This document shows positions 14,858 to 51,411 of a DNA stretch of 64,000 nt, in pieces. The DNA is taken from the IMG/VR virus record IMGVR_UViG_3300047095_000752, positions 181,226 through 245,225 of that record, one strand, 5' to 3'. Position 1 is the stretch's first letter; the number at the start of each line of letters is the position of its first letter. The translations under genes and the position numbers were made by a program. Under the pieces are notes generated by a model, which ran no database searches, was not told where the DNA came from, and saw nothing but the letters and a program-made list of their open reading frames with translations.

Positions 14858-14877
14858 CAATAATTAATATATATAGT
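14858..14877 (-). promoter_or_regulatory. phage promoter class A (AYTATATATAT-N7-YG)
   Basis: ACTATATATAT TAATTAT TG upstream of the GC-rich gene. Confidence 0.7.
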
Positions 14878-15002
14878 CTATATTTATAAGGGAAATTTTT
14901 TGTCAAATCGATTGGATCTTTTAGCAAAAGAGTGGTACAATGATGGTATCTATACAAACCATATAGACGGTTGTATTGGCAAAGTTTAGAATTCAAATTT
15001 TA

Positions 15003-15015
15003 AGACAAATGATTA
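15003..15015 (+). promoter_or_regulatory. phage promoter class B variant (AGACAAAT)
   Basis: GACA-N6-TA upstream of nrdJ. Confidence 0.4.
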
Positions 15016-15045
15016 TCATACAAAAAACACAGGAGTTTAATTTTT

Positions 15046-17031
15046 ATGAGTCGTGACGAAATGAATGAATGGATCTTCCCAATTAAAGAACGCTTTAAAC
15101 TAAGTGAAAAGTTTCTAGAAGATTTCATAGATAAAGAACCGAATTGGGGTCCACTGGGTAAATTAACATACAAGAGAACATATGCTGCCCGTGTAGAGGG
15201 CGAAGATCGCACCGAAGAATGGTTTGAAACCGTAAAGCGAGTCGTAGAGACATGTTACACGATTCAATTAAATCATTGTAAAAATTTAAGACTCCCTTGG
15301 AAAGCACATACAGCACAAAAGTCCGCCCAAGAAATGTATACTCGGATGTTTACTTTTAAGTTTATTCCTCCGGGGCGCGGACTTGCTAATATGGGTGATG
15401 TTATTTTTAAACGTGGATCTATGGGGTTATTCAATTGCTCTGCGGTATCCACTAACAGCACAAATTTCTCAGATCCATACGTTTTCATGATGGACGTTTC
15501 AATGTGTGGAGTGGGATGTGGATTTGATACAGAAGGATCCGGTAAATTCAAATTCGTAACACCAAAAACAACAGATAAGCCACATATAGTGGAAGACTCT
15601 CGTGAAGGGTGGTGTGAGATCCTCCGAGTTGTTCTTGAATCATATGTTGGTAAAGAACACTTACCTACTAATATTGATTATTCTCAGATCCGAAAGATTG
15701 GATCTCCTATCGTAACATCTGGCGGCACTGCTCCCGGTCCAGAACCTTTAATTAATTGTATAAATAAAATTCAAGAAATAATGAATAAACGAATTGACTA
15801 TGATATTTCATCTAGTGATATTGTTGATCTTATGAATATTATTGGAGTGTGTGTTGTAGCTGGCGGGAAAAGGCGCACAGCCCAGATAGCCTTTGGACAT
15901 TACAACGATCAAGAATATATTTCATTGAAGGATCCGGATCTGCACCAAGAAGAATTAATGACCCACCGTTGGGCGTCAAATAATAGCATCTATGCTCAAG
16001 ATGGAATGGATTACACCAATATTATTAATACAATTAAAAAGTCTGGCGAACCCGGAATTCTTTATAAACATCGTATGCAAAATTATGGTCGTTTGAAAGA
16101 TGGGTATCAAGAAGGCATTGATGGTAAGGCTACACTGCTTAATCCATGCGGTGAAATTTCGCTGGAGAGTGAAGAACTCTGCAATATAGCGGATGTCTTC
16201 CCGGCGCACCATAGTTCCTTCGAAGATTTTAAACGTAGTCTCAAATTTGCATTTCTATATTGCAAGTCGGTCACGCTCGTACCTACACATTTAACCACAA
16301 CAAATTCGAAAATCCTAAAGAACCGCAGAATTGGAATCTCTCAGTCTGGGATCGTGCAAGCAATCCAAAAGCACGGTACAACCGAATACTTCCGTTGGTG
16401 CGATGAAGGATATCAATACCTCAAAAACTTGGATAAAAAATATTCAGACTGGCTATGTATCCAGAAAAGCATTAAGATTAGCACGGTTAAGCCGAGCGGA
16501 ACGACATCACTTCTGTGTGGGTCTACGCCGGGGATTCATTTTGAACACTCCGAATATTATATCCGTCGAATTCGGATTGAAGAAACCAACGAACAATTGA
16601 TTCAATCGGTTAAAGATGCTGGCTATAAGTGGGAAGTATCCGCTTATGGTGATCGTTCCATAGTATTTGAAATACCCGTCAAGGCTGAGAACTTCTATAA
16701 AGGGAAGTCGGACGTTTCGGTTTGGGAACAAATGCAACTTGGATCTAAGATTCAATCAATTTGGGCGGATAATAGCGTTTCACAGACAGTGCACTTTACC
16801 AAAGACGAATCCCTCTATCTTAAAAATGTAATTGAAATGTACGAAGATCAGTTGAAGACCGTATCATTTCTACCCCTGTCGGATCACGGATATATACAAG
16901 CACCGTATGAGTCAATAACCAAGGATCAGTACGAAGAAATGAGCAAGAATATAATCGCAATAAACTTTAAGTTTAAGAATACACAAGACACCATCGAGAA
17001 ATTCTGTGATGGTGATAAGTGTATGATCTAA
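15046..17031 (+). CDS. nrdJ: class II (adenosylcobalamin-dependent) ribonucleotide reductase, monomeric RTPR type
   Basis: TYKRTY, PPGRGL, FNC, NPCGEI, RRIG, VKPSGT, C-terminal CDGDKC. Confidence 0.93.
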   Translation: MSRDEMNEWIFPIKERFKLSEKFLEDFIDKEPNWGPLGKLTYKRTYAARVEGEDRTEEWFETVKRVVETCYTIQLNHCKNLRLPWKAHTAQKSAQEMYTRMFTFKFIPPGRGLANMGDVIFKRGSMGLFNCSAVSTNSTNFSDPYVFMMDVSMCGVGCGFDTEGSGKFKFVTPKTTDKPHIVEDSREGWCEILRVVLESYVGKEHLPTNIDYSQIRKIGSPIVTSGGTAPGPEPLINCINKIQEIMNKRIDYDISSSDIVDLMNIIGVCVVAGGKRRTAQIAFGHYNDQEYISLKDPDLHQEELMTHRWASNNSIYAQDGMDYTNIINTIKKSGEPGILYKHRMQNYGRLKDGYQEGIDGKATLLNPCGEISLESEELCNIADVFPAHHSSFEDFKRSLKFAFLYCKSVTLVPTHLTTTNSKILKNRRIGISQSGIVQAIQKHGTTEYFRWCDEGYQYLKNLDKKYSDWLCIQKSIKISTVKPSGTTSLLCGSTPGIHFEHSEYYIRRIRIEETNEQLIQSVKDAGYKWEVSAYGDRSIVFEIPVKAENFYKGKSDVSVWEQMQLGSKIQSIWADNSVSQTVHFTKDESLYLKNVIEMYEDQLKTVSFLPLSDHGYIQAPYESITKDQYEEMSKNIIAINFKFKNTQDTIEKFCDGDKCMI

Positions 17032-17762
17032 CAAGAGTTAAACGAAATCCTTCGAAAGGGTTTAAAATGATATCAGATATTAACAACTGTCCAGAAGTTT
17101 ATTACCCAGAAAAAAATATATTTACGGGTATAATTGAAAATATATTTAATCAAATTGGAACCACCAATAAATATTACGTCGAATTTGGATTTACTGATGT
17201 TGATGAACTATATGATAATACAACATTTCTAAAAAGGCATCATGGTTGGAATGGCTTGTGGATGGATGTAAGTCCGAATACAAAGTATAATAAAAAGAAA
17301 AATCCAGCCGTAAAAATCCATAAAATAACTGCAGAAAATATTAATGATTTATTTGAGTTATATAATGTTCCTGAAATATTCGATTTGCTAATCATTGATG
17401 TTGATTTTAATGACTTATGGATTTGGAAAGCATTAAATGAAAAATATAAACCAAGAATGTTAATGATCGAATACAATTTATTCGTACCACCCGGAGAAAG
17501 TAAAGTTGTTGCGTACGACCCCGACTTTGTTATAACTACGTATGACCAATATTTTGGCGGAAGTTTTGACGCATTATTAAAATTATCAAAAGAAAAAAAT
17601 TATCAATTAATTGGATGTTCGGATGCAAATATGTTATTCGTACCAAATGATTTAGTGGATGGTAACTTTATAATACCAGATGACATATATACTTTATATA
17701 TCCCACCAAATCCAAATAAACACACACACCCAAAATCAAATATGACCATGATAGACTACTAA
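17019..17762 (+). CDS. FkbM-like SAM-dependent methyltransferase
   Basis: YYVEFG, GWNGLWMD, ITAENIN, FDLLIIDVDFNDLWIW, PRMLMIEYN. Confidence 0.8.
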   Translation: MYDLTRVKRNPSKGFKMISDINNCPEVYYPEKNIFTGIIENIFNQIGTTNKYYVEFGFTDVDELYDNTTFLKRHHGWNGLWMDVSPNTKYNKKKNPAVKIHKITAENINDLFELYNVPEIFDLLIIDVDFNDLWIWKALNEKYKPRMLMIEYNLFVPPGESKVVAYDPDFVITTYDQYFGGSFDALLKLSKEKNYQLIGCSDANMLFVPNDLVDGNFIIPDDIYTLYIPPNPNKHTHPKSNMTMIDY

Positions 17763-17775
17763 AAATCAATAAAAC

Positions 17776-19426: not shown

Positions 19427-19469
19427 AAAAAATCACCGTCCCTTAAATATTGGAGGCGGTGATTTTTTT
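19427..19469. terminator. bidirectional intrinsic terminator
   Basis: AAAAAATCACCGTC/GGCGGTGATTTTTTT between convergent genes. Confidence 0.75.
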
Positions 19470-19475
19470 GGGACA

Positions 19476-19772
19476 TCAAGTACATCCGACCCCCTGCGCC
19501 GGGATCTTATGGTCACCCGCCCGTAGGGTCGACCACCGCCCCTCTCCCTCCGGCCACTTCCATTCGCAGAACCCCGCCACCAACTCGAAGATGGATCCGT
19601 CTTCGAACTTGGCGGAAACATCACCCTTGTTTCCGCCACTCTCCACGAATTGTTTACAGTCTCCTTTTATGGAGGTAACCCGCTGATTAAACTCCGGGTT
19701 GGAGTTGAACTTCGTCTCAACTAATTTCATAGCCAAGACGTAGTCCCTTCCGAATGTTGATGATGTCCACAT
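19476..19772 (-). CDS. GC-rich orphan protein
   Basis: AAAGGG RBS, class A promoter upstream, terminator downstream. Confidence 0.65.
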   Translation of the reverse strand: MWTSSTFGRDYVLAMKLVETKFNSNPEFNQRVTSIKGDCKQFVESGGNKGDVSAKFEDGSIFELVAGFCEWKWPEGEGRWSTLRAGDHKIPAQGVGCT

Positions 19773-19842
19773 GTTATATCCCTTTTATGTGAAACTTTGA
19801 TATCCCCATCAAGTCACACAGAAGTTATGGGAATATAATTTA

Positions 19843-19862
19843 CAATTATTAATATATATAAT
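19843..19862 (-). promoter_or_regulatory. phage promoter class A
   Basis: ATTATATATAT TAATAAT TG. Confidence 0.7.
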
Positions 19863-19866: not shown

Positions 19867-20199
19867 TTAAAATACACAATTATGAATTCTATCCGCTTTT
19901 ACTTTATCCCCGACGATGTAGTAAAAGTTTTTTTGCTTTAACGCATTCGCGAATTTGTGTAGGCAGATGTGAACGGCACCTTCAATCCGTATCCCGGAAT
20001 TGAGATCTACTCGGGTACCGTCATTTAATTTCATGACCATCTTATCATCCGTCTTATCACGTAATGTTACTGTATATCCGTTGGACGAATCAAGCTCAAT
20101 ATTGGACCCGTACACCCATATGATCTCCCCTATCGAAGGAAGTATTTTTCCACCGATGGTGATATCACGCCCCGTAACATTAACTAACATTGGTACCAT
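19867..20199 (-). CDS. hypothetical protein
   Basis: AAGGAGG RBS before ATG 20199. Confidence 0.6.
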   Translation of the reverse strand: MVPMLVNVTGRDITIGGKILPSIGEIIWVYGSNIELDSSNGYTVTLRDKTDDKMVMKLNDGTRVDLNSGIRIEGAVHICLHKFANALKQKNFYYIVGDKVKADRIHNCVF

Positions 20200-20211: not shown

Positions 20212-20250
20212 AAAAAGAAAAACCGGCGCTCCCCACAATGAGGAGCGCCG
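20212..20250 (-). terminator. intrinsic terminator
   Basis: CGGCGCTCC/GGAGCGCCG stem followed by T-run on the minus strand. Confidence 0.75.
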
Positions 20251-20256
20251 AACCTG

Positions 20257-20340
20257 TTACGCGAAGAAGTCGTTGCCATTCGACTTCTTCTTGAAGAGTT
20301 TGTTGAAAATATTAATGATATAATCAATTACCCCAGCCAT
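20257..20340 (-). CDS. 27-aa amphipathic peptide MAGVIDYIINIFNKLFKKKSNGNDFFA
   Basis: own class A promoter, AAAGGG RBS and terminator; below the ORF-track cutoff. Confidence 0.65.
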   Translation of the reverse strand: MAGVIDYIINIFNKLFKKKSNGNDFFA

Positions 20341-20395
20341 ACCGTTACCCTTTCGATGTTTAATGTTGTATTATAGAATATACATACTCTATCTT

Positions 20396-20415
20396 CGTTA
20401 GTTTATATATATAAT
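20396..20415 (-). promoter_or_regulatory. phage promoter class A
   Basis: ATTATATATAT AAACTAA CG. Confidence 0.65.
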
Positions 20416-20861
20416 CACTGTACAGTGGATGGTAGTTGCAATAATTGAGTCCCTCGTTGCCAAGAACTCTCCAATAACATAGGTCTATTCACTTTTGATG
20501 AATCGACACGAGATGTCGCTAATACCCAGCTTGCCGCCATTATCCCACTTCCCGATGATATGTTTATATATACTTTGCTTTTTCGGTGCATATGAATTAG
20601 TTGTTCACTTGCCATATAAATGGATTCCATATCATTAGGATGATCTATGATAACTTTTTTTGCTCGTATATATAATTTTGGGTGTTTAGCTCTTAGATTA
20701 TGAACAAACCCACCACTTCCTAATACCCGCTTGTATCGTATAGAATCATATAATATAAACAACTGATCTATTTCTATATCCCGCAGGATATCACATATCG
20801 CCCCTCGTTTCGTGTTTTCCTCAAGATCGGTAGTACCAACCCAACTCAATAAGACACTCAC
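20415..20861 (-). CDS. stand-alone CARF-domain protein (RtcR/PspF-type N-terminal domain)
   Basis: LLSWVGTTDL...P.D..SIY...INISSGS..MAASWVL...LLESS..RG pattern of CARF domains of sigma54 activators; no AAA+ or HTH. Confidence 0.7.
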   Translation of the reverse strand: MSVLLSWVGTTDLEENTKRGAICDILRDIEIDQLFILYDSIRYKRVLGSGGFVHNLRAKHPKLYIRAKKVIIDHPNDMESIYMASEQLIHMHRKSKVYINISSGSGIMAASWVLATSRVDSSKVNRPMLLESSWQRGTQLLQLPSTVQ

Positions 20862-20874
20862 ATAAACACTCCTT

Positions 20875-21300
20875 CTAAGTTTCGTTCAAAGGGTTATACA
20901 CAACACACGTGATTAAAGATTGTAAACAATAAGTATTATCAAAATCCGGATCCCTATATACAAATACGACATTGTTAAAACACATGAGATATAAATAATA
21001 CTTCGATAATCCGAATTCAACATAAAAACTACGATATACAGACATGTTATAAACAGATCCATAATAACGAAAGTTGTAATATTTTTTCTGTTTATTATTT
21101 AAATATTGTTTATTATGTGTTGTCTTAGTATGATGTGTTATATGTATATCCTTTGGTATGATATTTCGAAGATCCGATGTTTTACTATCTATGAAATAAG
21201 GTAAAACGAGTCTATAATCTTTTTTCAAAATTTTAAATATTAGTTCCATACATCGGATAATTATATTATCATAGGTGTCCGACAGATTTAATTTGTACAC
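20875..21300 (-). CDS. orphan protein (array member)
   Basis: 141 aa; CMELIFKILKKDYR N-terminal motif shared with other array genes. Confidence 0.5.
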   Translation of the reverse strand: MYKLNLSDTYDNIIIRCMELIFKILKKDYRLVLPYFIDSKTSDLRNIIPKDIHITHHTKTTHNKQYLNNKQKKYYNFRYYGSVYNMSVYRSFYVEFGLSKYYLYLMCFNNVVFVYRDPDFDNTYCLQSLITCVVYNPLNET

Positions 21301-21326
21301 ACGAAGCCCTCAAGTTAAATACCATA

Positions 21327-21725
21327 TCATAGACGATACTCAAATATATATTCTCCGAAATACGTCCCGGTTAAATCATAGTCCTCAAGTCTAACCAAAA
21401 AACTTAACAATACGAAATTTGTTTTAAAAGTAAATGCGGTCAATGTAGTAATTCCATCACAGTCGTATATTATGGTATCACTTAATATCACCGCATTCTT
21501 GTTGAATGTATAATTATGTTTAGGCTTATATTTCAAATCTGGTATATACAATTCCATTTCTTCACCATTTGGATAGGAGTCATATAAACCAATTAGTCTG
21601 TTGTTTACACTTTGGCTTGACCACAATTTCATGTAATTGAATATAGGGAATATTTTAACATTTAAGTTAGACACAAGAACATGGGTATAATATATACACT
21701 GTTGAATTCTATGTTGTATATCCAT
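21327..21725 (-). CDS. orphan paralogue (PIFN...KxNF family)
   Basis: FPIFNY...KTNFVLL. Confidence 0.55.
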   Translation of the reverse strand: MDIQHRIQQCIYYTHVLVSNLNVKIFPIFNYMKLWSSQSVNNRLIGLYDSYPNGEEMELYIPDLKYKPKHNYTFNKNAVILSDTIIYDCDGITTLTAFTFKTNFVLLSFLVRLEDYDLTGTYFGEYIFEYRL

Positions 21726-22114
21726 TATACGGGGAGTACCGAACTTCTAAATGGCAGTCTGTTATAATTAGATGATGGACATGCATATCTAGATGTTAGA
21801 ATTAAAAAATTGTACTTTGGAACTCTTAGAACTAATACGGTCGAGTCGTGTACACTAGATTTGGAGAACCCGCGACACACACTCAATTTAAATGTGTGAT
21901 CCGAATTAACTAATGGATAAGGAAAGTGAATGTCGATCCCATAGAAATTGAATTTTACTTTATCACTTTGTTTGGAATCTATACATATTATATCATGCAT
22001 CATAAAATTAAATATAGGAAATCGACATATTTTTAGGTCGTAGATCAATCTTAAAATTAAAGCCAAACTATTAGTTAACTTAGATTTATATACAAGACTT
22101 GGTCCCACCATCAC
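21725..22114 (-). CDS. orphan paralogue (PIFN...KxNF family)
   Basis: FPIFNF...KYNFLIL. Confidence 0.55.
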   Translation of the reverse strand: MMVGPSLVYKSKLTNSLALILRLIYDLKICRFPIFNFMMHDIICIDSKQSDKVKFNFYGIDIHFPYPLVNSDHTFKLSVCRGFSKSSVHDSTVLVLRVPKYNFLILTSRYACPSSNYNRLPFRSSVLPV

Positions 22115-22560
22115 ATCATCCTCCTTTTTTGCTTAACATTCATCATACTGTAGTTATATGGCCAGGTATCTCTATGGTATTCAGAATCCTCGTTGGACCC
22201 GTCTGTTACCCTTTTTAATAACATAAAATTATATTTACTGGTGAATAAGGATAGGGATACATCACAACATTTATCTCTTATTGGCGCAAACACATTCCTG
22301 AATATAATATTTGGGGAACCAACTGATATTTTAAAATTAGACATATAAAGAGACTCAGCAGACGACCTTCGTATTGGCGTAGTTTTGGTATAATTAGTTT
22401 GAAAGTTATTATAATCCCATGCTTTAACAAAATTAAATATAGGTATAATTGTAATATGTAACCCAAAGTCTATGAGCTTAAACAATTTATTTACTATACT
22501 ATATTGCATTCCTTTAATATAATGTATATACTTATATGAATTTTGATTCCATGGGTACAA
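22111..22560 (-). CDS. orphan paralogue (PIFN...KxNF family)
   Basis: IPIFNF...KYNFMLL. Confidence 0.55.
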   Translation of the reverse strand: MYPWNQNSYKYIHYIKGMQYSIVNKLFKLIDFGLHITIIPIFNFVKAWDYNNFQTNYTKTTPIRRSSAESLYMSNFKISVGSPNIIFRNVFAPIRDKCCDVSLSLFTSKYNFMLLKRVTDGSNEDSEYHRDTWPYNYSMMNVKQKRRMM

Positions 22561-22617
22561 GCTCTAACCTCCACTCGTCATAATTAACCGCAGAAAAATA
22601 AAACAGAAGTATAACTC

Positions 22618-22637
22618 CAATAATAAATATATATAGT
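22618..22637 (-). promoter_or_regulatory. phage promoter class A
   Basis: ACTATATATAT TTATTAT TG; heads the paralogue/CARF operon. Confidence 0.7.
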
Positions 22638-24172: not shown

Positions 24173-24218
24173 AAAAAACACGCTACCGGGATATCTGCCG
24201 GTAGCGTGTTCTTTTTTA
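24173..24218. terminator. bidirectional intrinsic terminator
   Basis: AACACGCTACCGG/CCGGTAGCGTGTT flanked by A- and T-runs. Confidence 0.8.
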
Positions 24219-24222
24219 GTTC

Positions 24223-24633
24223 TTATGCTTTCTTTCCTTTCTGGATTGCTTCGAGGACAATCCCGGTTGAAAGGACCGCGAACAATATCACGGTCTGCAC
24301 CATAGCCGCCCCAGCCACTGCAGTTAGGCAGTAGGGGGATTCGTTCAACTTGTAGGACATGGCGATGATCGCCAGTCCCGCTACGACGAGGGAAATAACC
24401 GCCCGGAGGCGGATGTGATTTTCCCACATGTAGCGCGTCCGCTCATGTGGCTCCGACCACCTCTGATTGATAATCAGTACCCAAAGCGCCGCTGTTGTTC
24501 CGGCGACACATGATACCACCGGGATGCTGATGTTGTTGAGTGGTGCGAAATACGCCGCCCCGTAGATTGCAGCCTCTCCAATGATAGCAGCGATTAGCAT
24601 AAAAGGCATTAAAGCCTTCCGATCTTCAAACAC
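24223..24633 (-). CDS. GC-rich multi-pass membrane protein
   Basis: about four hydrophobic helices; GAAGGAG RBS. Confidence 0.7.
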   Translation of the reverse strand: MFEDRKALMPFMLIAAIIGEAAIYGAAYFAPLNNISIPVVSCVAGTTAALWVLIINQRWSEPHERTRYMWENHIRLRAVISLVVAGLAIIAMSYKLNESPYCLTAVAGAAMVQTVILFAVLSTGIVLEAIQKGKKA

Positions 24634-24663
24634 GATTTTACTCTCCTTCCAAGAGGTATTATA

Positions 24664-24981
24664 CTATTTCCCGAACATCGCCCCCATCATCCGACCCGCC
24701 GTCGCCAATCCCATCACCGTATTTTTAATCTCCTCTATTTTGGGTCTAAGACCCGATGCCTTGAAGCGGAGCGCGTCAACAATGACGCCCACCACAATCA
24801 AGGTAACAACGCCACATATCAGATAGGTCGGGGCGGCGAGCGCCTTCATAGCACCCACCGCGAGGAAGCCCACCATGTAGGCTTCCTTGTTCCCCCCGGT
24901 CTGGATTCCTTTCCAGACCGGGGTAACGAATGCTCGGGTGAGGGACCCAATCCTTTTGAGTCCCTTTACGATGGGGTTCAT
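24664..24981 (-). CDS. GC-rich membrane protein
   Basis: ATG 24981 in ATGA overlap with the upstream gene; hydrophobic core. Confidence 0.65.
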   Translation of the reverse strand: MNPIVKGLKRIGSLTRAFVTPVWKGIQTGGNKEAYMVGFLAVGAMKALAAPTYLICGVVTLIVVGVIVDALRFKASGLRPKIEEIKNTVMGLATAGRMMGAMFGK

Positions 24982-25316
24982 GTGCAAGCCCCAACCCGTG
25001 CACCCACGGACTGGGCGAGGTACCATGCCGCGTAGACGGCGATGGCGGGGATGAACCACAAGAGGCTACACCCCGTCACCACGAGGTCTAGAATCTGACC
25101 GGCCTTGTGGTCTACGGTCCCCTTCCTCTCAATCGCGAGCATGATACCCATGCTCACGAAACTTCCCGTGATCGCCACAGCGGCAATCGTGGGGAAGATG
25201 GTGCCGACAGCACACCAACCAATAAGGCTGATGGCGTCGGCGGTGACTGGCGACCTCTCAAGGAAGTCAAGACACTTCCCGATGGTCACCTGAAGGTGAA
25301 GTTTGAGTTTACCCAT
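24978..25316 (-). CDS. GC-rich membrane protein
   Basis: AAAGGA RBS; hydrophobic helices. Confidence 0.65.
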   Translation of the reverse strand: MGKLKLHLQVTIGKCLDFLERSPVTADAISLIGWCAVGTIFPTIAAVAITGSFVSMGIMLAIERKGTVDHKAGQILDLVVTGCSLLWFIPAIAVYAAWYLAQSVGARVGACT

Positions 25317-25349
25317 AATATATCCTTTCTTGGAGATGTTTTTGTTCAG

Positions 25350-25796
25350 TTATACCGCCACACAACCGACGCGGGCGGGACGCTCACCCATAAAGCTATT
25401 ATTACGGATGGTGGATAAAATCTTCTCACCGATAATGTAAGTGGCGAGGGCGGTGATGACACGGAGTGTAAAACCGAGTAGCACACCCACCACCATAAGC
25501 TGCAACCCAACCAACCAGATGGTCAGTTTGCCTAGCACCGCATAACCGGCGAAGCGGGCAATACCCCCTTCGATGACGACCGTCAGTATCGTCTTCAACG
25601 AGGGCTTAGAGACGAGCTCAATCGCGGAGCATACAAGCACCACACCACCAATGGCGGTGAGAGCGACTGGGGCGGCGACGAGACCCATCGCCATCCCACC
25701 TACACCCACAACAACGGACGCCACAGGGGCGAACTTCACGCCGAAGTTGAGGGCGCGGACGATGATATTCTTGACATTGGATACGATGCTTTTCAT
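25350..25796 (-). CDS. GC-rich membrane protein
   Basis: first gene after class A promoter; very hydrophobic. Confidence 0.7.
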   Translation of the reverse strand: MKSIVSNVKNIIVRALNFGVKFAPVASVVVGVGGMAMGLVAAPVALTAIGGVVLVCSAIELVSKPSLKTILTVVIEGGIARFAGYAVLGKLTIWLVGLQLMVVGVLLGFTLRVITALATYIIGEKILSTIRNNSFMGERPARVGCVAV

Positions 25797-25869
25797 GGTA
25801 TTACCCTTTGATGTTTAGACTATATGAAACCACCATTCAATCCGCATAGATCGATGATAGTATTCTTTA

Positions 25870-25889
25870 CACTTCTTAATATATATAAT
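25870..25889 (-). promoter_or_regulatory. phage promoter class A
   Basis: ATTATATATAT TAAGAAG TG, immediately after terminator hairpin 25901-25928. Confidence 0.7.
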
Positions 25890-25938
25890 GAAAAATCAAC
25901 AAAAAAAGACCCCATAAATATGAGGTCAAAATGTTAAA

Positions 25939-28154: not shown

Positions 28155-28190
28155 AACAAAAAATAAAGCCTGTATATAAACAGGCTTAAA
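28155..28190 (-). terminator. intrinsic terminator
   Basis: AAGCCTGT/ACAGGCTT followed by T-run on the minus strand. Confidence 0.7.
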
Positions 28191-28239
28191 ATTTATGGGT
28201 GTTAATTTACCTCACTTTAAGTTAAAGTTGAACTATATA

Positions 28240-28259
28240 CAATATTTAATATATATAAT
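28240..28259 (-). promoter_or_regulatory. phage promoter class A (no downstream ORF)
   Basis: ATTATATATAT TAAATAT TG. Confidence 0.65.
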
Positions 28260-30569: not shown

Positions 30570-30719
30570 ATGCGTAAATTTAATGAAGATTTTTCATCAC
30601 CCATGAGTTCAGTTAGTATGCCTTCATATGAGACATTTACTAAACCTTATCGCTTAGATAAAGCAAAAAAATTTATTAAAAAAATTGCTGCTAAAAAAAT
30701 AAACTCTACTAAAAAATAA
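30570..30719 (+). CDS. 49-aa basic protein (MRKFNEDF...KKINSTKK)
   Basis: AAAGGA RBS, followed by terminator. Confidence 0.5.
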   Translation: MRKFNEDFSSPMSSVSMPSYETFTKPYRLDKAKKFIKKIAAKKINSTKK

Positions 30720-30760
30720 CCCCCCAGTAGCGTCGTGTCAGCGCGGACTGGGGGATTTAA
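30711..30760. terminator. bidirectional terminator
   Basis: CCCCCAGT/ACTGGGGG stem with A/T flanks. Confidence 0.65.
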
Positions 30761-30954
30761 AATTTTATTCGGGTGGAGTTTAGGGACCAGCCCTTATAGC
30801 TATGTTCATTTTAATTACCCAATCATGGTGAAGCCCTAGCTGTGGTTGGCGCGGGCGTGGGAAACTTGTTCAACCACCTCGTCGACGGTGGCGTTCGGAT
30901 AGCGGACTACGACTTGCCAGATCGCTCTAACAAGTGTAGTCCGCTCAACTGGAC

Positions 30955-31239
30955 TTAGCGGGCGCACGCGGGGCACCCACCGAGCCTCGCCCGCAGCCGG
31001 GCGAACCGGCTGGGGGGCGGAAGCACAGGGGCTTTCTTCAGCCCCAGCTTCAGAGCGGCTGCCCCGACAATCGCCGGGTTCCTCAACACCATGGCACCGC
31101 CAATGGCGGCCACCATGATTACGCCCGCGACCGCGTAATCCCGCTTCGTAAGCGGGGTGTCGGTCGTCTTGGTTGTGGTCGTCTCTTCGGTAGTGGTGAT
31201 CTTTTCGTGGGTCTCTGCGTTATTGGTGTCTTGTTCCAT
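30955..31239 (-). CDS. GC-rich small membrane protein
   Basis: GGAAGG RBS; Thr-rich N-terminus, one TM helix, basic Cys tail. Confidence 0.65.
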   Translation of the reverse strand: MEQDTNNAETHEKITTTEETTTTKTTDTPLTKRDYAVAGVIMVAAIGGAMVLRNPAIVGAAALKLGLKKAPVLPPPSRFARLRARLGGCPACAR

Positions 31240-31295
31240 GACATACCTTCCATTATGCCACCTATTCTTAGAATTAGGGGCGTTAGTTGTAAATT

Positions 31296-31315
31296 CAATA
31301 GTTTATATATATAGT
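31296..31315 (-). promoter_or_regulatory. phage promoter class A
   Basis: ACTATATATAT AAACTAT TG. Confidence 0.7.
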
Positions 31316-34902: not shown

Positions 34903-35415
34903 ATGGAAGAAGAAATTTGGAAACCTATTCCAGAATATGAAGATTCATATGAAGTTAGCAATCTAGGTAGAATAAAAAGTATAAAATTCAATAAAGAAAA
35001 AATACTAAAACTATCATTCGATAATTATGGCTATAATCATTTGAGTTTACGTAAAAATAAAATAGGTAAAACCAAAAAAGTACATAGATTAGTTATGTTA
35101 ACTTTTAAAAATGATTCTTATTTTGATGGCGCTCAAGTTAATCACATTAATGGTATAAAGACTGATAATAGATTAGATAATCTAGAATGGTGCGATCAAT
35201 TCCATAATATGCAACACGCATTTAAATTAGGGCTACAAATATCACTCAAGGGTGAAAATCATGGTGCCGCTAAATTAAATCAAAATCAAGTTAATAAGAT
35301 TAGATTTTACTATGAAAATAAAATATTTAATCAACGTCAATTAGCAAATATGTTTAATATAAAACGAGGAACCATTTCCGATATCACCACTAAAAAAATT
35401 TGGTCTCATTGTTAA
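34903..35415 (+). CDS. NUMOD4-HNH homing endonuclease
   Basis: EEIWKPIPEYEDSYEVSNLGRIKS; VNHINGIKTDNRLDNLEW. Confidence 0.92.
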   Translation: MEEEIWKPIPEYEDSYEVSNLGRIKSIKFNKEKILKLSFDNYGYNHLSLRKNKIGKTKKVHRLVMLTFKNDSYFDGAQVNHINGIKTDNRLDNLEWCDQFHNMQHAFKLGLQISLKGENHGAAKLNQNQVNKIRFYYENKIFNQRQLANMFNIKRGTISDITTKKIWSHC

Positions 35416-35450
35416 ATAAATTTAGAAGTAACCGTTCGAAAGCGAGTTTT

Positions 35451-37751: not shown

Positions 37752-37772
37752 AATATACAAAAAAAGGGGGTC

Positions 37773-37934
37773 TCATTCCCCTTTTGGTTGGCGTTTCGGT
37801 TTGGGGCGCGGTACAGTGTACCGCGTCCCTTCAACCTTACCGCGCCCGTCACACTCTTCGCAGCGGACTCGGTAAGGGTCCTCCGGGTTGTCGAGGAGAT
37901 AATCCCCTTTCCCGTTGCATTTTTTGCAGTCCAT
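37773..37934 (-). CDS. 53-aa GC-rich Zn-finger protein (two CxxCxGxG motifs)
   Basis: MDCKKCNGKG...RCEECDGRG; GGAGGTG RBS. Confidence 0.7.
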   Translation of the reverse strand: MDCKKCNGKGDYLLDNPEDPYRVRCEECDGRGKVEGTRYTVPRPKPKRQPKGE

Positions 37935-37968
37935 AATATTCACCTCCTTTCTAGTGGTGGAGGCGGTC

Positions 37969-38208
37969 CTAGATGGACCACCTCCGTTTGAGGTCGGTGA
38001 CGTGATCGCGAATCACGTCGTATGGAAGTTCATCGCCCTCGGCTTTGAACTCCTGTTTGGCGAGCGCGGCGATGGCGGCGGCGCGCTGGGAAACCCGCTT
38101 GCGAGCGGGGGTGGGGGTGGCGACGGGGGCGAAAACGCTACGCAGCAACTGCGTAGCGTTACTCACCACCTCAAACTCCACCATGGACTGGGAACAGACA
38201 TCGCACAT
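37969..38208 (-). CDS. GC-rich orphan protein (MCDVCSQ...)
   Basis: AAGGAG RBS before ATG 38208. Confidence 0.6.
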   Translation of the reverse strand: MCDVCSQSMVEFEVVSNATQLLRSVFAPVATPTPARKRVSQRAAAIAALAKQEFKAEGDELPYDVIRDHVTDLKRRWSI

Positions 38209-38257
38209 GGTGCGTCTCCTTTTGTTGTTGTTGTTGTTTTTGTTGGTGAGAGCAGGG

Positions 38258-38551
38258 TCACAAGACCCCACTCCCGTCAAACAGGACACTCGCCTCCTCC
38301 TCATACTCATCCTCAACAGGCTCCTCCTTGCGGCTGATGAGTTCTTCATACTCAGCATCCGACAAGGCGGCGAGTTGGAGAGCATCCACCATCTCCTCGC
38401 GCAGCGGGTGGTTGCGGATCTCATCACAGAGATCGCTAGCGATGCACCGACCCTGTTCAAGCCGGTAAGTCCCGAGGCGGCGGGTCTTCGGTGCGCACGC
38501 GGCTTCCCATACGCTGGCGGCGGCGGCTTTGAGTTCTTCGACAGTTTTCAT
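38258..38551 (-). CDS. GC-rich orphan protein with acidic tail
   Basis: GGGAG RBS before ATG 38551; first gene after class A promoter. Confidence 0.65.
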   Translation of the reverse strand: MKTVEELKAAAASVWEAACAPKTRRLGTYRLEQGRCIASDLCDEIRNHPLREEMVDALQLAALSDAEYEELISRKEEPVEDEYEEEASVLFDGSGVL

Positions 38552-38620
38552 GGTATTTCTCCCTACCACGTTACACATCCCACCACCATTTCACAATGAA
38601 ATTGGCTAGTGGTTTGTTTA

Positions 38621-38640
38621 CACTTCTCTATATATATAAT
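38621..38640 (-). promoter_or_regulatory. phage promoter class A
   Basis: ATTATATATAT AGAGAAG TG. Confidence 0.7.
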
Positions 38641-42037: not shown

Positions 42038-42126
42038 GAAGTGAGCCGCGAGCCTAGTACTCATGGGACTTCGCCTCATAAACCCCGTTCCACTGTCTGC
42101 AGACCTTGTAACGGGGTTTATTTTTT
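42038..42126 (+). ncRNA. candidate ~90-nt small RNA or attenuator
   Basis: TTGACA-17-TATTAT promoter (42003-42031), GC-rich structured body, AAACCCCGTT/AACGGGGTTT terminator. Confidence 0.5.
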
Positions 42127-42146
42127 ATTATATATATTCAATATTG
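42127..42146 (+). promoter_or_regulatory. phage promoter class A
   Basis: ATTATATATAT TCAATAT TG directly after a terminator. Confidence 0.7.
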
Positions 42147-42185
42147 TATACGAAACCCTCAACCAGAACGGGAGTAAACAATATT

Positions 42186-42458
42186 ATGCCAACACCGAAT
42201 GAACAAGATCTGATCATATTTATGCATGAGTTCAACACCATTAACCATGAGATTATAAGCGCTATGGAACGGCGTACGTTTAGCATGGTTAAGATTACAG
42301 GTAACGGAGGAAACGTTACGGATCCCGCCACCCTAATCGTCGATGCTAAAAACATCGTCAAACAGACGGATCGCATCGGGGAATACAAACAAGAATTGGG
42401 AATCCTCAAAAATCGCTACGAGCGGTTCCTCACCGACAAAGGAATTGTAAATGCCTAG
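42186..42458 (+). CDS. hypothetical protein
   Basis: GGGAG RBS, ATG 42186. Confidence 0.6.
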   Translation: MPTPNEQDLIIFMHEFNTINHEIISAMERRTFSMVKITGNGGNVTDPATLIVDAKNIVKQTDRIGEYKQELGILKNRYERFLTDKGIVNA

Positions 42459-43837: not shown

Positions 43838-44782
43838 ATGCCCGCAAAATTAACTCATGACTTTGTGAACTCTTATTATAGAGATCATGGATATACATTA
43901 GATTCCACATATAATGGAAATAAGAATAAAGATGACCTGATATGCCAAGAGGGACATAAAACTAAAATATGTTTTGATAAATTTAAAAACCGTGGTGATC
44001 GATGTTCCGAATGTTCTGGTAACGAAAAATGGACATATGAAGAAGTATACAAAGCCTTCAAAGATAAAGGTTGTGAATTATTAGAAACAGAATATATTAA
44101 TAATCAAACAAAAATGAAATACAAATGTAAATGCGGGAATGGAAGTTCAATAACATTAGGTAATTTTAATTCAGGGCATAAATGCTCAAAATGTGGCGGC
44201 AACGAAAAATTAAAATATGAAACTGTCTACAAAGCCTTCAAAGATCAAGGTTGTGAATTGTTAGAAACAGAATATATTAATACACTTACTAAAATGAGAT
44301 ACAGGTGTGAATGTGGTAATGAATCCATCAGTTCGTATAATAATTTTCGGAGTGGTAATAGGTGTAAGGAATGTGGGTTATTAAAAAGGACTGGCGCGAA
44401 TCACCCAAGATTTAAAAAAGATAGAACTAGAATGGATCGAACTAAAATACTATCGTTTGATTATAGAAAACTCCACATCTTAAATGACGATCCCAATTAT
44501 GCAAATCACGTCCAATCCAAAAATGTCGCCAAGACATCGGGTAATAGATGGGATATATCTGATTATACCGTCGATCATATACAACCAAGAATTGCCTTTA
44601 TTGATAATGATCTTGACATTAAATACGATTTAAAAATAATTAAAGAAATCTGTAACCTACGAGAAAACTTAAGAATAATACCTCAAAAAGAAAATGGATC
44701 TAAAGCCGGTAAATACAACCAAGAAGAGTTCATGGCTTGGTTCAATGAAAAGATAAATGTATATAACTTAAAGGAAATATAA
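43838..44782 (+). CDS. Zn-ribbon-repeat HNH endonuclease
   Basis: three C.LLETEYIN...KM.Y.C.CG...G.(R/K)C..C repeats; VDHIQP...NL...N..K. Confidence 0.75.
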   Translation: MPAKLTHDFVNSYYRDHGYTLDSTYNGNKNKDDLICQEGHKTKICFDKFKNRGDRCSECSGNEKWTYEEVYKAFKDKGCELLETEYINNQTKMKYKCKCGNGSSITLGNFNSGHKCSKCGGNEKLKYETVYKAFKDQGCELLETEYINTLTKMRYRCECGNESISSYNNFRSGNRCKECGLLKRTGANHPRFKKDRTRMDRTKILSFDYRKLHILNDDPNYANHVQSKNVAKTSGNRWDISDYTVDHIQPRIAFIDNDLDIKYDLKIIKEICNLRENLRIIPQKENGSKAGKYNQEEFMAWFNEKINVYNLKEI

Positions 44783-48868: not shown

Positions 48869-48871
48869 AAC

Positions 48872-50095: not shown

Positions 50096-50657
50096 TACTT
50101 CCGATGTAGATTTTATTATACCACTATTAAAACAAGAAAATAATTCAATTAAAAAGATAGCTTATAGTGGAACCCATGGTACTGGTAAAACTACATCGTG
50201 CTTCAATTTAGCTACACAGTGTAAATTAAATTGTCATAGTAAATCCATCCATCTATTAACTGAAGTTGCTAGTGAATCTCCATTTAAAATTAATAAAGAG
50301 ACTACAGTTGAAAGTCAGATGTGGATATTCGTAAATCAAATTTCAAGAGAATTAGAAAATTCACTTCGGTATAAAATATTAATATCAGATCGAACTATTG
50401 TTGATAATATTGCTTATACTATGGTAGCTGGATTCAAAGATTTGGCTAAAAATCAGTATGAATTCGCGAAGTCATTTATTTCAACATATGATTATATTTT
50501 TGTTAAAAAGAACGCTAACAACGATTTTCACTATGAAGATGGTATTCGGGACTCAAAGGATTCCCAGTACCGACAAGATGTAGAAGATGCGCTACTTAAT
50601 ATTTACATAAAACTGGAATCTTACATGGTAGCTCGAAATCGTATAATTTTTATTTAA
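50085..50657 (+). CDS. P-loop kinase (AAA_28 / NadR-like, possible dNMP kinase)
   Basis: YSGTHGTGKTT, EVA, SDRTIVDNIAY, DGIR. Confidence 0.8.
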   Translation: MLTNTSDVDFIIPLLKQENNSIKKIAYSGTHGTGKTTSCFNLATQCKLNCHSKSIHLLTEVASESPFKINKETTVESQMWIFVNQISRELENSLRYKILISDRTIVDNIAYTMVAGFKDLAKNQYEFAKSFISTYDYIFVKKNANNDFHYEDGIRDSKDSQYRQDVEDALLNIYIKLESYMVARNRIIFI

Positions 50658-50671
50658 CAAATATTTAACAA

Positions 50672-50712
50672 AAAAATAAATCCCCCACAATTAAGTTTGT
50701 GGGGGATTTTTT
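50672..50712. terminator. bidirectional terminator
   Basis: AAATCCCCCACAA/TTGTGGGGGATTT. Confidence 0.8.
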
Positions 50713-51172
50713 AGTCGAACGCTTGATAGGTCGGGTTATAAACAAAACACGCGGACTCCACGCAATTCCAACTTGCCGTGGATATTATTACTTTTTTAAT
50801 ATATAACCCAATACTATTAAATCGACCGTACGGAATTATTTTATTATAAACATTTCCATTTATATCACCACATCCAATCATTACAAAACTTGGGATTAAT
50901 TTTGGAGTATATACAATATCACTATCTTTCGGTTCGTATATCGGTAAAATTTGCTGGACCGTTGATAATCGATCACACCTATATGATCGAACCGTCGAAT
51001 CTATAAAACAATGTCTAATAAGTGATATGTATTCAAACGTAGTTCTTCCTCTAATTGTAATTGTATTAATCATTTTAAATATTAGATATATTGATCTTAC
51101 AGCATAAACTTTATAATTGAATTTTATATTCTCTGTGATCTTATCAAATTTATAAAGCACAAAAAAATCCAA
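50711..51172 (-). CDS. orphan protein resembling the array genes
   Basis: RSIYLIFKMI motif. Confidence 0.45.
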   Translation of the reverse strand: MDFFVLYKFDKITENIKFNYKVYAVRSIYLIFKMINTITIRGRTTFEYISLIRHCFIDSTVRSYRCDRLSTVQQILPIYEPKDSDIVYTPKLIPSFVMIGCGDINGNVYNKIIPYGRFNSIGLYIKKVIISTASWNCVESACFVYNPTYQAFD

Positions 51173-51308
51173 AAAGAGCTACCGACAGTCCTCCCCAGAG
51201 GGAGATACCATCAGTAGCAGGGAAATGGGGTAGTATAATATTCGTTGTATGGATGTCTCTCAGAGAAGAGACGCGGTATGCGTACAACTTTTGCCGTCCT
51301 TCGGACAT
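51150..51308 (-). CDS. 52-aa protein with hydrophobic C-terminus
   Basis: AAAGGAGG RBS, class A promoter upstream. Confidence 0.5.
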   Translation of the reverse strand: MSEGRQKLYAYRVSSLRDIHTTNIILPHFPATDGISLWGGLSVALFGFFCAL

Positions 51309-51391
51309 TCGTCCTCCTTTCGTTGATGCGGCTATAACTATCTTTGATGCTATATAGGTCCCGATATATTTTTCCTTTATAGTGTACCTAC

Positions 51392-51411
51392 CAATATTAA
51401 ATATATATAGT
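51392..51411 (-). promoter_or_regulatory. phage promoter class A
   Basis: ACTATATATAT TTAATAT TG. Confidence 0.7.

What the first reader, a model, noticed from the sequence alone, without database searches (positions are those of the whole stretch)
14858..51411. Family of promoter-hairpin expression cassettes (AYTATATATAT-N7-YG) carrying GC-rich orphan genes
Seen: a 20-nt motif with fixed spacing occurs at 14858, 19843, 20396, 22618, 25870, 28240, 31296, 38621 and 51392 (minus strand) and at 42127 (plus), with a weaker copy at 29959. The 10 strong copies lie between genes (or overlap the neighbouring stop) and point into a short transcription unit. Several are followed by a 5' leader hairpin (19772, 25796, 31239, 38551). 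Two sit directly behind a terminator (25870, 42127), and most units end in a terminator. Pairs share extra sequence: AGAAGTGTAAA at 25870 and 38621, and TAAACATC(G)AAAGGGTAA leaders at 20340 and 25796. The markedly GC-rich islands (13.5-14.8, 19.5-19.8, 24.2-25.8, 30.8-31.2, 37.8-38.6 kb) all lie behind this motif. Established: phiKZ-type virion RNAPs use short AT-rich early promoters, and T4-type phages have mobile promoter/stem-loop (PeSL) cassettes. Inference: this is an early, phage-RNAP-driven cassette system that captures and shuffles host-takeover or anti-defence genes.
Basis: partly seen in the sequence, partly recalled or inferred. Interest (0 to 1): 0.85.

Follow-up and report, generated by a model that had tools for sequence, protein, structure and literature searches.

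The report
Jumbo-phage early promoters with GC-rich cargo
The repeated 20-base AT-rich motif is almost certainly the early promoter read by the virus-carried RNA polymerase of an uncultured AR9/phiKZ-like giant phage from lake water. A subset of these promoters drives small, unusually GC-rich orphan gene units that are present, absent or replaced in related phages.

Summary
All 10 motif copies are at the stated coordinates (0.06 expected by chance). The 245-kb virus record holds 32 copies, all between genes, and 31 point into a same-strand gene (the copy at 28240 runs only into a terminator). The full consensus, AYTATATATAT-T-A-A-W-T-A-T-T-G, has no -35 element. It is nearly the published early promoter of Bacillus phage AR9 (AAATATATATTAT-N6-G+1), which the virion RNA polymerase reads. 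The genome encodes two sets of multisubunit RNAP beta/beta' homologues, and its portal is closest to AR9/PBS1. So this is a known kind of promoter in a new freshwater jumbo-phage clade.

Three things go beyond that:
- The strongest GC-rich islands lie directly behind the motif (9 of 32 versus 1.6 expected), unlike in AR9.
- Their third-codon-position GC (GC3) is 0.56-0.78 against about 0.25 in core genes, and it stays high in orthologues only 43-52% identical.
- Whole promoter-to-terminator units are present, absent, emptied or re-loaded in relatives.

Metatranscriptome contigs cover only one such GC-rich unit in a 6-kb test stretch. The cargo are mostly orphan genes.

A shuffling mechanism, early timing and host-takeover or anti-defence function are not shown. 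The leader hairpin belongs to a subfamily, not the whole family, and the "weak copy" at 29959 is not supported.

The parts
14858..14877 (-). Promoter P14858 (predicted TSS at G 14858), divergent from the ribonucleotide reductase gene 15046-17031(+)
   Evidence: The motif and about 25 nt upstream are conserved in relatives REL and L062.
13490..14803 (-). Cargo of P14858: 424-aa two-repeat ORFan (13529-14803; GC 0.51, GC3 0.56) and terminator 13519-13490
   Evidence: Only 3 homologues, all in related phage contigs. Same slot and same high GC3 at 48-78% identity. Replaced by two unrelated ORFs in G001.
19430..19862 (-). Unit P19843: promoter 19843-19862, structured 71-nt leader, 98-aa PKD-like single-domain protein 19476-19772 (GC3 0.66), shared bidirectional terminator about 19430-19470
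   Evidence: The whole unit is absent from REL, which has a 29-bp gap there. A 43%-identical GC-rich orthologue sits behind the motif in L098.
20215..20415 (-). Unit P20396: promoter overlapping the upstream stop codon, conserved 27-aa micro-ORF 20257-20340, terminator 20251-20223. The 110-aa ORF 19867-20199 follows.
   Evidence: The micro-ORF (24/27 aa) and the terminator are conserved in L098.
20415..22637 (-). Unit P22618: promoter 22618-22637, T-run at +16 to +23, five AT-rich small ORFs (22111-22560, 21725-22114, 21327-21725, 20875-21300, 20415-20861). The last ORF is CARF-like.
   Evidence: The promoter and a 5-ORF operon are conserved in REL with partly different ORFs.
24177..25927 (-). 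Unit P25870: upstream terminator 25927-25908, promoter 25870-25889, leader hairpin about 25826-25865, four small membrane proteins (25350-25796, 24978-25316, 24664-24981, 24223-24633; GC3 0.62-0.72), palindromic terminator 24177-24210
   Evidence: RNA contigs of two metatranscriptome runs cover 24211-25398 only. The leader is about 90% identical in REL while the proteins are 37-52% identical. Absent from G001.
28160..28259 (-). Unit P28240: promoter overlapping the stop of the cupin gene, then about 75 nt and terminator 28187-28166, with no ORF ('empty' unit)
   Evidence: In REL the same promoter carries 87-aa and 167-aa ORFs.
30712..31315 (-). Unit P31296: promoter 31296-31315, 94-aa TM protein 30955-31239 (GC 0.64, GC3 0.78), small ORF 30836-30976, terminator about 30712-30756
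   Evidence: The slot and the GC-rich cargo are conserved in REL.
37755..38640 (-). Unit P38621: promoter 38621-38640, leader hairpin about 38580-38612, three ORFs with strong SD sites (38258-38551, 97 aa; 37969-38208, 79 aa; 37773-37934, 53-aa DnaJ-type zinc finger), terminator about 37755-37780. GC 0.58, lying between plus-strand genes.
   Evidence: ORF1 has no homologue in 5.8e9 proteins. The unit is absent from REL and G001.
42095..42458 (+). Unit P42127: terminator, promoter 42127-42146, 90-aa ORF 42186-42458, upstream of the volactin-like gene
   Evidence: G001 has a motif at the same slot with a different leader and cargo.
50675..51411 (-). Unit P51392: promoter 51392-51411 divergent from the DnaB-like helicase gene, ORFs 51150-51308 and 50711-51172, bidirectional terminator about 50675-50715
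   Evidence: The unit is absent from G001, where only the terminator remains.

Best explanation
The motif is the early-class promoter of an uncultured freshwater jumbo phage distantly related to AR9/PBS1 and phiKZ. Transcription is carried out by the phage's own multisubunit virion RNA polymerase, starts at or next to the invariant G at motif position 20, and needs no -35 element or host sigma factor. Each copy heads a short transcription unit: promoter, 34-84-nt leader, one to five small genes with Shine-Dalgarno sites, and usually an intrinsic terminator.

The units fall into two visible sub-classes:
- (a) Units whose transcript has a small hairpin and a T-run within the first 30 nt, with AT-rich cargo.
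- (b) Units with a longer, often structured and conserved leader (typically starting GTAAA) and compositionally foreign, GC-rich ORFan cargo.

Over the divergence of the clade, whole units are gained, lost, emptied or re-loaded at fixed slots, usually next to existing terminators. They therefore behave like morons or T4 PeSL-bounded modules. Recombination at the shared promoter and terminator sequences is the inferred cause.

Shown here: the motif statistics, its position and orientation, the phage RNAP genes, the match to the AR9 consensus, the compositional anomaly, the presence/absence pattern in relatives, and in-situ RNA over one unit.

Inferred: the identity of the polymerase, the exact TSS, early timing, and the recombination mechanism.
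For: - Motif counts: 10 against 0.06 expected in the window and 32 genome-wide. The weight-matrix scores are cleanly separated from background.
- The conserved block is 20-26 nt with no -35 element. All copies are intergenic and 31 of 32 are co-oriented with a downstream gene (P28240 has no ORF).
- Sigma70-like sites are not enriched (80 against 77 expected).
- The genome has two beta and two beta' multisubunit RNAP homologues. The portal is closest to AR9/PBS1.
- The AR9 virion-RNAP early consensus AAATATATATTAT-N6-G+1 was mapped by dRNA-seq and primer extension and is chloramphenicol-independent (PMC5312081). As a general rule, every RNAP-encoding jumbo phage has such an AT-rich early motif (PMC7598289).
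- The same motif heads orthologous units in four related contigs.
- First genes behind the motif are ORFans, a methyltransferase and a pentapeptide-repeat protein. None is a recognisable structural gene.
- RNA contigs cover only the P25870 cargo within a 6-kb stretch.
- Module gain and loss is seen.
- Paralogous leaders stand in front of different cargo.
Against: - No transcription start site has been mapped. The RNA evidence consists of low-depth assembled contigs without strand or 5' ends, and GC bias in assembly cannot be fully excluded.
- The AT core is shifted by 1 nt relative to the G compared with AR9, so the start could be at position 21.
- Which RNAP set is virion-borne is unknown, and the record is only about 78% complete.
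- No near-identical cassette copies, hybrid junctions or circular forms were found. Recombination at promoters is therefore only inferred.
- Several GC-rich cargoes are stably inherited rather than shuffled.
Confidence: 0.78

Rival explanations
1. The motif is read by host RNA polymerase, either as an extended -10 promoter or via a phage-encoded sigma-like factor, as with T4 late promoters.
For: The motif is AT-rich and contains TATA-like hexamers. T4-type late promoters also lack a -35 element. The portal has a T4-like Pfam match.
Against: - The conserved block is 20-26 nt and contiguous, far longer than a -10 element.
- No sigma70 region 2 was found in the record, although 11 of 14 control genomes gave a match.
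- Sigma70-like sites are at background frequency.
- The phage has its own two RNAPs.
- The motif matches the AR9 virion-RNAP consensus almost base for base.
- No downstream gene is a recognisable structural (late) gene.
Confidence: 0.06
2. It is a phage-RNAP promoter of the middle or late class, read by the non-virion RNAP, rather than the early class.
For: Timing was not measured. The two RNAP sets cannot be assigned from sequence.
Against: - Known non-virion RNAP promoters are short and different: AACA-N6-TA/G in AR9 and TATG in phiKZ. They cannot be found bioinformatically, whereas early motifs are long, AT-rich and conspicuous.
- The cargo are small ORFans and accessory genes, not recognisable virion genes.
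Confidence: 0.1
3. On the GC-rich cargo: the islands are recent horizontal acquisitions from a GC-rich donor that have not yet drifted to the phage's composition. The link to the promoter exists only because new genes survive where a promoter is available.
For: - GC3 is 0.56-0.78 against about 0.25 in core genes.
- The P38621 and P19843 units are missing from the closest long relative.
- The PKD-like cargo resembles repeats of large bacterial surface proteins.
- The composition changes sharply at the promoter and at the terminator.
Against: - Three independent cargo families keep GC3 at 0.51-0.67 in orthologues only 43-52% identical, at the same slot, in 33%-GC genomes. That argues for a maintained state rather than a transient one.
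- The largest cargoes have no bacterial homologues at all.
- The cargo avoid exactly the codons served by the phage's own tRNAs.
Confidence: 0.3
4. The repeat is not a promoter but a protein-binding or recombination site (replication, packaging or homing target).
For: It is a conserved 20-mer found at module boundaries.
Against: - Orientation follows the downstream genes strictly, with fixed geometry to the ribosome-binding site and start codon.
- Copies are spread over the whole genome.
- The motif is equivalent to an experimentally proven promoter.
Confidence: 0.03

Closest known systems
Early (virion-RNAP) promoters of Bacillus phage AR9/PBS1: AAATATATATTAT-N6-G+1 (PMC5312081)
   Same: - About 20 nt long, with an alternating-TA core followed by TTA and an invariant terminal G.
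- No -35 element.
- About 30-40 copies per roughly 250-kb genome, intergenic, heading small early operons.
- The genome encodes two multisubunit RNAPs.
- The portal is the closest match, at 23% identity.
   Different: - The AT core lies 1 nt closer to the G, and positions -6 to -1 are also conserved here (AWTATT).
- Leaders are longer (34-84 nt against about 20-40 nt).
- AR9 shows no GC-rich cargo behind its early promoters (1 of 22 above the 95th percentile).
- The phages are only distantly related, and this one encodes ThyX, so it probably has thymine DNA.
phiKZ-type early promoters and the general rule for RNAP-encoding jumbo phages (PMC7598289)
   Same: An AT-rich, highly conserved element of about 10 nt or more centred near -10, with a conserved start about 6 nt downstream, found bioinformatically upstream of early operons.
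   Different: The sequence differs from phiKZ's own motif. Whether this phage forms a phage nucleus or packages the RNAP was not examined.
PeSLs: composite terminator/early-promoter cassettes that mediate modular shuffling in T4-type phages (PMC2839356, PMC4122927)
   Same: - Conserved early promoters bound small, non-essential, mostly ORFan modules that differ between relatives by insertion, deletion and replacement.
- A quarter of the copies (7-8 of 32) are composite terminator-plus-promoter junctions.
- Indel boundaries coincide with promoter and terminator.
   Different: - The promoter is for a phage RNAP, not host sigma70.
- The stem-loop is not a conserved part of the repeat.
- The copies share only about 20-26 nt, apart from some leader pairs.
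- No recombinant junctions or circular intermediates were observed.
Morons of lambdoid phages (own promoter + gene + terminator, deviant base composition); from my own knowledge
   Same: Autonomous transcription units inserted between neighbouring genes, often on the opposite strand, with sharply different GC content.
   Different: They use the phage's own early promoter rather than a host promoter active in the prophage. This phage is lytic-type. The deviant composition persists in diverged orthologues.

Membership tests
Jumbo-phage virion-RNAP early promoter (AR9/phiKZ type) | The genome encodes two sets of multisubunit RNAP beta/beta' homologues (virion and non-virion) | tested here: met
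   PF00562 matches at C1:51491-52723 and 78061-79203. PF00623 matches at 56779-57198 and 122499-123800. All are above the curated cut-offs.
Jumbo-phage virion-RNAP early promoter (AR9/phiKZ type) | A long, highly conserved AT-rich element centred near -10, with a conserved start about 6 nt downstream and no -35 element | tested here: met
   Information profile of the 32 copies. Base-by-base similarity to the AR9 consensus and to 22 AR9 copies. The start site itself is inferred.
Jumbo-phage virion-RNAP early promoter (AR9/phiKZ type) | Over-represented, intergenic, and co-oriented with small operons | tested here: met
Jumbo-phage virion-RNAP early promoter (AR9/phiKZ type) | Primary 5' ends at the conserved G, with transcripts present minutes after infection and without new protein synthesis or host RNAP | not testable with these tools
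   The only evidence is unstranded, low-depth metatranscriptome contigs over the P25870 cargo.
Jumbo-phage virion-RNAP early promoter (AR9/phiKZ type) | RNAP subunits packaged in the virion | not testable with these tools
   The phage is uncultured and no virion proteome exists.
PeSL-type mobile regulatory cassette (T4-type phages) | Composite unit of stem-loop terminator plus conserved early promoter | tested here: inconclusive
   Seven of 32 copies (8 with a borderline one) have a terminator within about 15 nt upstream. The rest do not.
PeSL-type mobile regulatory cassette (T4-type phages) | Indels and replacements between relatives bounded by the cassettes | tested here: met
   P19843, P38621 and P51392 units are present in one genome and absent in another. 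The P28240 unit is empty here and loaded in REL. The P14858 and P42127 slots are re-loaded in G001.
PeSL-type mobile regulatory cassette (T4-type phages) | Direct evidence of recombination between cassettes (hybrid junctions, excised circles) | tested here: not met
   No joints were found in four runs. The loose ends at the motif were traced to other promoter loci of the same genome.
PeSL-type mobile regulatory cassette (T4-type phages) | Sigma70-type early promoter of a T4-like phage | tested here: not met
   There is no -35 element, and the phage has its own RNAPs.

The most novel reading that the evidence does not exclude
A subset of the virion-RNAP units forms a distinct 'immediate-early' module class. 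Its marks are a conserved structured 5' leader and cargo whose GC-rich codon usage is actively maintained. That codon usage is possibly host-like, and it avoids AUA, UUA and AGA, the codons served by the phage's own tRNAs. The proposed benefit is that these proteins can be made from the host tRNA pool at the very start of infection. These promoter-to-terminator modules would be exchanged within the clade by recombination at the 20-nt promoter, which would make them an analogue of T4 PeSLs in RNAP-encoding jumbo phages.
Probability: 0.3. Interest if true: 0.6.

Novelty: new variant of a known kind. Interest (0 to 1): 0.45.

Why it matters
- It extends the AR9/phiKZ rule to an uncultured, widespread lake-water clade. 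That rule is that each RNAP-encoding jumbo phage has one long AT-rich early motif. The near-identity of the motif between phages whose portals share only 23% identity suggests strong conservation of virion-RNAP promoter recognition.
- The motif gives a ready map of the early regulon (32 units) for a phage that cannot yet be grown.
- The GC-rich cargo that stays GC-rich in diverged orthologues points to selection on composition or codon usage in a subset of early genes. This was not seen in AR9.
- The present/absent/re-loaded units show how accessory genes turn over in these genomes. The cargo are candidates for the first proteins a jumbo phage makes in its host.

Tried and rejected
- Megablast of 20 kb against the phage collection: no match.
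- Rfam on the window: nothing. The GC islands are therefore not known structured RNAs. Outside the window, some GC-richer stretches near other motif copies are tRNA genes.
- T7-type RNAP and sigma70 region 2: none found.
- The search for related loci with the 866-aa neighbour: no relatives. Relatives were instead found through the motif itself and through cargo homologues.
- Pfam and PHROGs on 10 GC-rich cargo proteins: only a weak DnaJ-type zinc finger.
- Protein atlas on the 424-aa cargo: no lead. AlphaFold2 on its 4-sequence alignment gave pLDDT 40, which is unusable, so no fold search was run.
- tblastn of the two beta' homologues could not tell virion from non-virion RNAP.
- DNA-run loose ends at 22618, 25866 and 25898 first looked like cassette recombination. 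They are other promoter loci (P84823, P19843, P85472) laid on the shared motif. Two loose ends in run X8 match nothing in this genome and stay unexplained.
- All-against-all search for long shared sequence between cassettes: only 13-18-nt matches, marginal against the null.
- I rejected the idea that the GC islands are non-coding. They have SD sites and GC3 > GC1 > GC2 periodicity, and they are conserved at protein level in relatives.

Full report

The pattern AYTATATATAT-N7-YG occurs 10 times in the window, at exactly the coordinates and strands given. Shuffles give 0.06 on average, and none of 100 reached 10. The window is the last 64 kb of a 245,225-bp IMG/VR virus record that is about 78% complete and 34.8% GC. 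The whole record holds 32 copies, 30 on the minus and 2 on the plus strand.

The strand bias mirrors gene orientation. Almost all genes from 0 to 165 kb are on the minus strand. A weight matrix built from the copies finds the same 32 sites with scores of 20-33. It finds one further weak site inside a gene, and the best score in shuffled genomes is 16.7.

There is no information upstream of position 1, so there is no -35 element.

In the window every copy lies between genes or overlaps the upstream stop codon. Nine copies are followed at 34-84 nt by a Shine-Dalgarno site and a start codon. The tenth (28240) runs straight into a terminator.

The 'weaker copy' at 29959 keeps only the TA core and the final G. 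It fails five conserved positions and points antisense into a gene. AR9 data show that one deviation can abolish such a promoter, so I do not count it.

**2. What the motif is**

The record encodes two homologues of the RNAP beta subunit and two of beta', all above Pfam cut-offs. No T7-type RNAP and no sigma70 region 2 were found. The portal's best matches are the Bacillus jumbo phages AR9, PBS1 and BpSp, at 23% identity over 73% of its length. These are RNAP-encoding relatives of phiKZ.

In AR9, 41 early promoters were mapped by dRNA-seq and primer extension. They are used without new protein synthesis, so they are read by the virion RNAP. Their consensus is AAATATATATTAT-N6-G(+1) (PMC5312081). 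A review states that every RNAP-encoding jumbo phage has such a conspicuous AT-rich early motif. It adds that middle and late promoters are short and cannot be found by sequence alone (PMC7598289).

The present consensus is ATTATATATATTAAWTATTG. It has the same length, the same TA core followed by TTA, and the same terminal G. The core is shifted by one base. Twenty-two AR9 copies fetched for comparison look alike. Sigma70-like sites are at background frequency.

The motif is therefore best read as the virion-RNAP early promoter of a new freshwater member of this group, with the start at G20, or possibly position 21. The polymerase, the start site and the timing are inferred by analogy, not shown.

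**3. Anatomy of the units**

The units are compact:
- P38621 is the clearest. It has a promoter, a 70-nt leader with a stable hairpin (z -2.8), three ORFs of 97, 79 and 53 aa each behind an AGGAG-type site, and a terminator. It spans 886 bp at 58% GC, on the minus strand between two plus-strand genes.
- P25870 follows a terminator. It carries a hairpin leader and four small membrane proteins, and ends at a palindromic terminator.
- P14858 carries a 424-aa two-repeat protein and a terminator.
- P19843 carries a 98-aa protein that turns out to be a single PKD-like domain. It matches the repeats of large bacterial surface proteins with E-values as low as 2e-13.
- P20396 carries a 27-aa micro-ORF and a terminator. 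Both are conserved in a relative.
- P22618 carries five AT-rich small ORFs.
- P28240 carries nothing: about 75 nt and then a terminator.

Eight of the 10 units end in a terminator. Genome-wide, 7-8 of 32 copies sit directly behind a terminator.

Leader hairpins are significant for only three window units, so they mark a subfamily. A different early-transcript feature marks another subfamily. Ten of the 32 copies have a T-run beginning at +15 to +22, mostly preceded by a short AT hairpin at the 5' end of the transcript. Nine of these 10 carry AT-rich cargo (downstream GC 0.27-0.34), and the feature recurs in relatives.

**4. The GC-rich islands**

The five strongest islands of the whole record (GC 0.50 or higher) all begin at a motif copy. 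Nine of 32 downstream 300-nt windows exceed the genome's 95th percentile, against 1.6 expected (p = 2e-5). Upstream windows show no enrichment.

The excess sits at third codon positions. GC3 is 0.56-0.78 in these ORFs against 0.25-0.36 in core genes. Other GC-richer genes of the window (29073-29945, 57735-59069) owe their GC to amino-acid composition, with GC3 of 0.28-0.30.

The islands are coding. They have SD sites and the expected GC3 > GC1 > GC2 pattern, and they are conserved at protein level in relatives. They match no Pfam, PHROG or Rfam family apart from a DnaJ-type zinc finger. Three were searched against billions of proteins. The 424-aa protein has three homologues, all in related phage contigs. 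A 340-aa cargo outside the window and the 97-aa ORF1 of P38621 have none.

AR9 shows no such association: 1 of 22 downstream windows exceeds the 95th percentile, and the maximum GC is 0.37.

**5. Relatives and turnover**

I found relatives in two ways. Searching the virus collection for the motif itself found IMG/VR contigs with 4-11 copies. Walking from cargo homologues found Logan contigs.

G001 is 46 kb with proteins 45-93% identical, and is syntenic with window 11-61 kb. REL is 30 kb of a 137.7-kb Logan contig with core proteins 63-91% identical, and is collinear with window 13.5-39 kb.

| Unit | What relatives show |
|---|---|
| P14858 (424 aa) | At the same slot in REL and L062, still GC 0.50. 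G001 has the promoter there with two unrelated ORFs. |
| P19843 | Absent from REL (29-bp gap). Present with a 43%-identical GC-rich orthologue in L098. |
| P25870 with its four membrane proteins | Present in REL, absent from G001. |
| P28240 | Empty here. In REL it carries 87-aa and 167-aa ORFs. |
| P38621 | Absent from REL and G001. |
| P51392 | Absent from G001, where only the shared terminator remains. |
| P42127 slot | G001 has a different leader and cargo. |

So units come and go as promoter-to-terminator modules, usually next to an existing terminator. This is how morons and T4 PeSL-bounded modules behave (PMC2839356; PMC4122927).

Direct signs of recombination were not found. Cassettes share only 13-18 nt beyond the motif. 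The loose ends at the motif in DNA runs are simply other promoter loci. There are hints of duplicated promoter-leader modules in front of different cargo. These are the P25870/P19843/P38621 leaders and a roughly 50-nt shared leader at two G001 promoters.

**6. Two further observations**

First, high GC3 persists in orthologues that are only 43-52% identical, in genomes of about 33% GC. This holds for three independent cargo families: 0.56/0.56/0.51, 0.62-0.72 against 0.57-0.67, and 0.66 against 0.60. Meanwhile the P25870 leader stays about 90% identical. This argues against simple un-ameliorated recent transfer and for a maintained state.

The phage carries tRNAs for AUA (two copies), UUA, AAY and AGA. 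The GC-rich cargo use AUA, UUA and AGA at 10%, 5% and 6% of their codon families, against 37%, 38% and 37% in long core genes. This is compatible with translation from the host's tRNA pool. It does not prove it, because low use of A-ending codons follows from high GC3 anyway.

Second, the phage is found in many lake-water metagenomes. Two metatranscriptome runs hold contigs that cover only 24211-25398 of the 6-kb test stretch. That is the cargo of P25870, with the left edge at its terminator, while 4.3 kb of neighbouring AT-rich genes have zero depth. This is weak evidence (assembled, unstranded, depth 1-4) that this unit is transcribed in situ well above its neighbours.

**7. Verdict**

The motif family is real and is a known kind of element: the early promoter of an RNAP-encoding jumbo phage. 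It is found here in a new, uncultured clade. The 'cassette' reading is supported as a pattern of modular gain, loss and replacement, but not as a demonstrated mechanism. 'Host-takeover or anti-defence' remains a guess.

The part that goes beyond the literature I could check is the tight and evolutionarily persistent link between a subset of these promoters, conserved leaders and GC-rich ORFan cargo.

Noticed in passing
genome-wide; window 22618 (for example C1:49783, 63010, 77548, 103944, 116924, 128020, 130074, 152253, 167739): Ten of 32 promoters have a T-run (at least 7 of 8 T) starting at +15 to +22, mostly preceded by a short AT-rich hairpin at the 5' end of the transcript. The arrangement looks like a promoter-proximal attenuator or a downstream promoter element. 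Nine of the 10 units carry AT-rich cargo, and the feature recurs in G001, G002 and REL.
   Followed up: partly
window 28160-28259: A promoter followed only by about 75 nt and a terminator. It is either a short non-coding RNA or an emptied cassette. The same promoter in REL carries two ORFs.
   Followed up: partly
window 43838-44782 and at least 14 paralogues across the record: A multi-copy 250-330-aa family with a CapR homology domain (E 2e-9). It sits at different positions in this genome, G001, G002 and REL, sometimes between a promoter and its cargo (C1:129286-130059). This suggests a mobile or diversifying element.
   Followed up: partly
window 35400-37751: The PIN-PhoH gene is interrupted by a LAGLIDADG intein. 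The orthologues in G001 and REL (409-414 aa) lack it.
   Followed up: partly
window 42757-43833: An actin-like protein matches Pfam Volactin (E 4e-52). It is 75% identical in G001 and sits just downstream of the P42127 unit.
   Followed up: no
window 44783-47101: A glycoside hydrolase family 9 (cellulase-like) gene with a CelD N-terminal domain. G001 has two tandem copies.
   Followed up: no
window 20415-20861: The last gene of the P22618 operon has weak CARF-like matches (HFX_2341_N at E 3e-5, below the cut-off, and RtcR). It is conserved in REL (75%) and G001 (44%). It could bind cyclic-oligonucleotide signals.
   Followed up: no
G000:C1:13572-16862 (outside the window): tRNA genes Ile-TAT (two copies), Leu-TAA, Asn-GTT and Arg-TCT, plus one odd tRNA. 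All are on the promoter strand downstream of motif copies and serve A/U-ending codons common in core genes.
   Followed up: partly
window 23052-23070: In DNA run X5, contigs leave the flap-endonuclease gene at 23052 and re-enter at 23070 with 255 nt of unrelated sequence. This points to a strain variant with an insertion in this gene.
   Followed up: no
window 24501 and 24690; 25858 and 25893: Run X8 has contigs that match the GC-rich cargo or the P25870 promoter and then continue into sequence absent from this genome. These could be variant cargo in co-occurring strains.
   Followed up: partly
window 1361-2962: A large homing-endonuclease-like gene (DUF7487; PHROG homing/HNH endonuclease, E 7e-84).
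   Followed up: no
G000:C1:95280-95885 and 99902-100627 (outside the window): The first genes behind two other motif copies are a pentapeptide-repeat protein and a class I methyltransferase, both moderately GC-rich.
   Followed up: no
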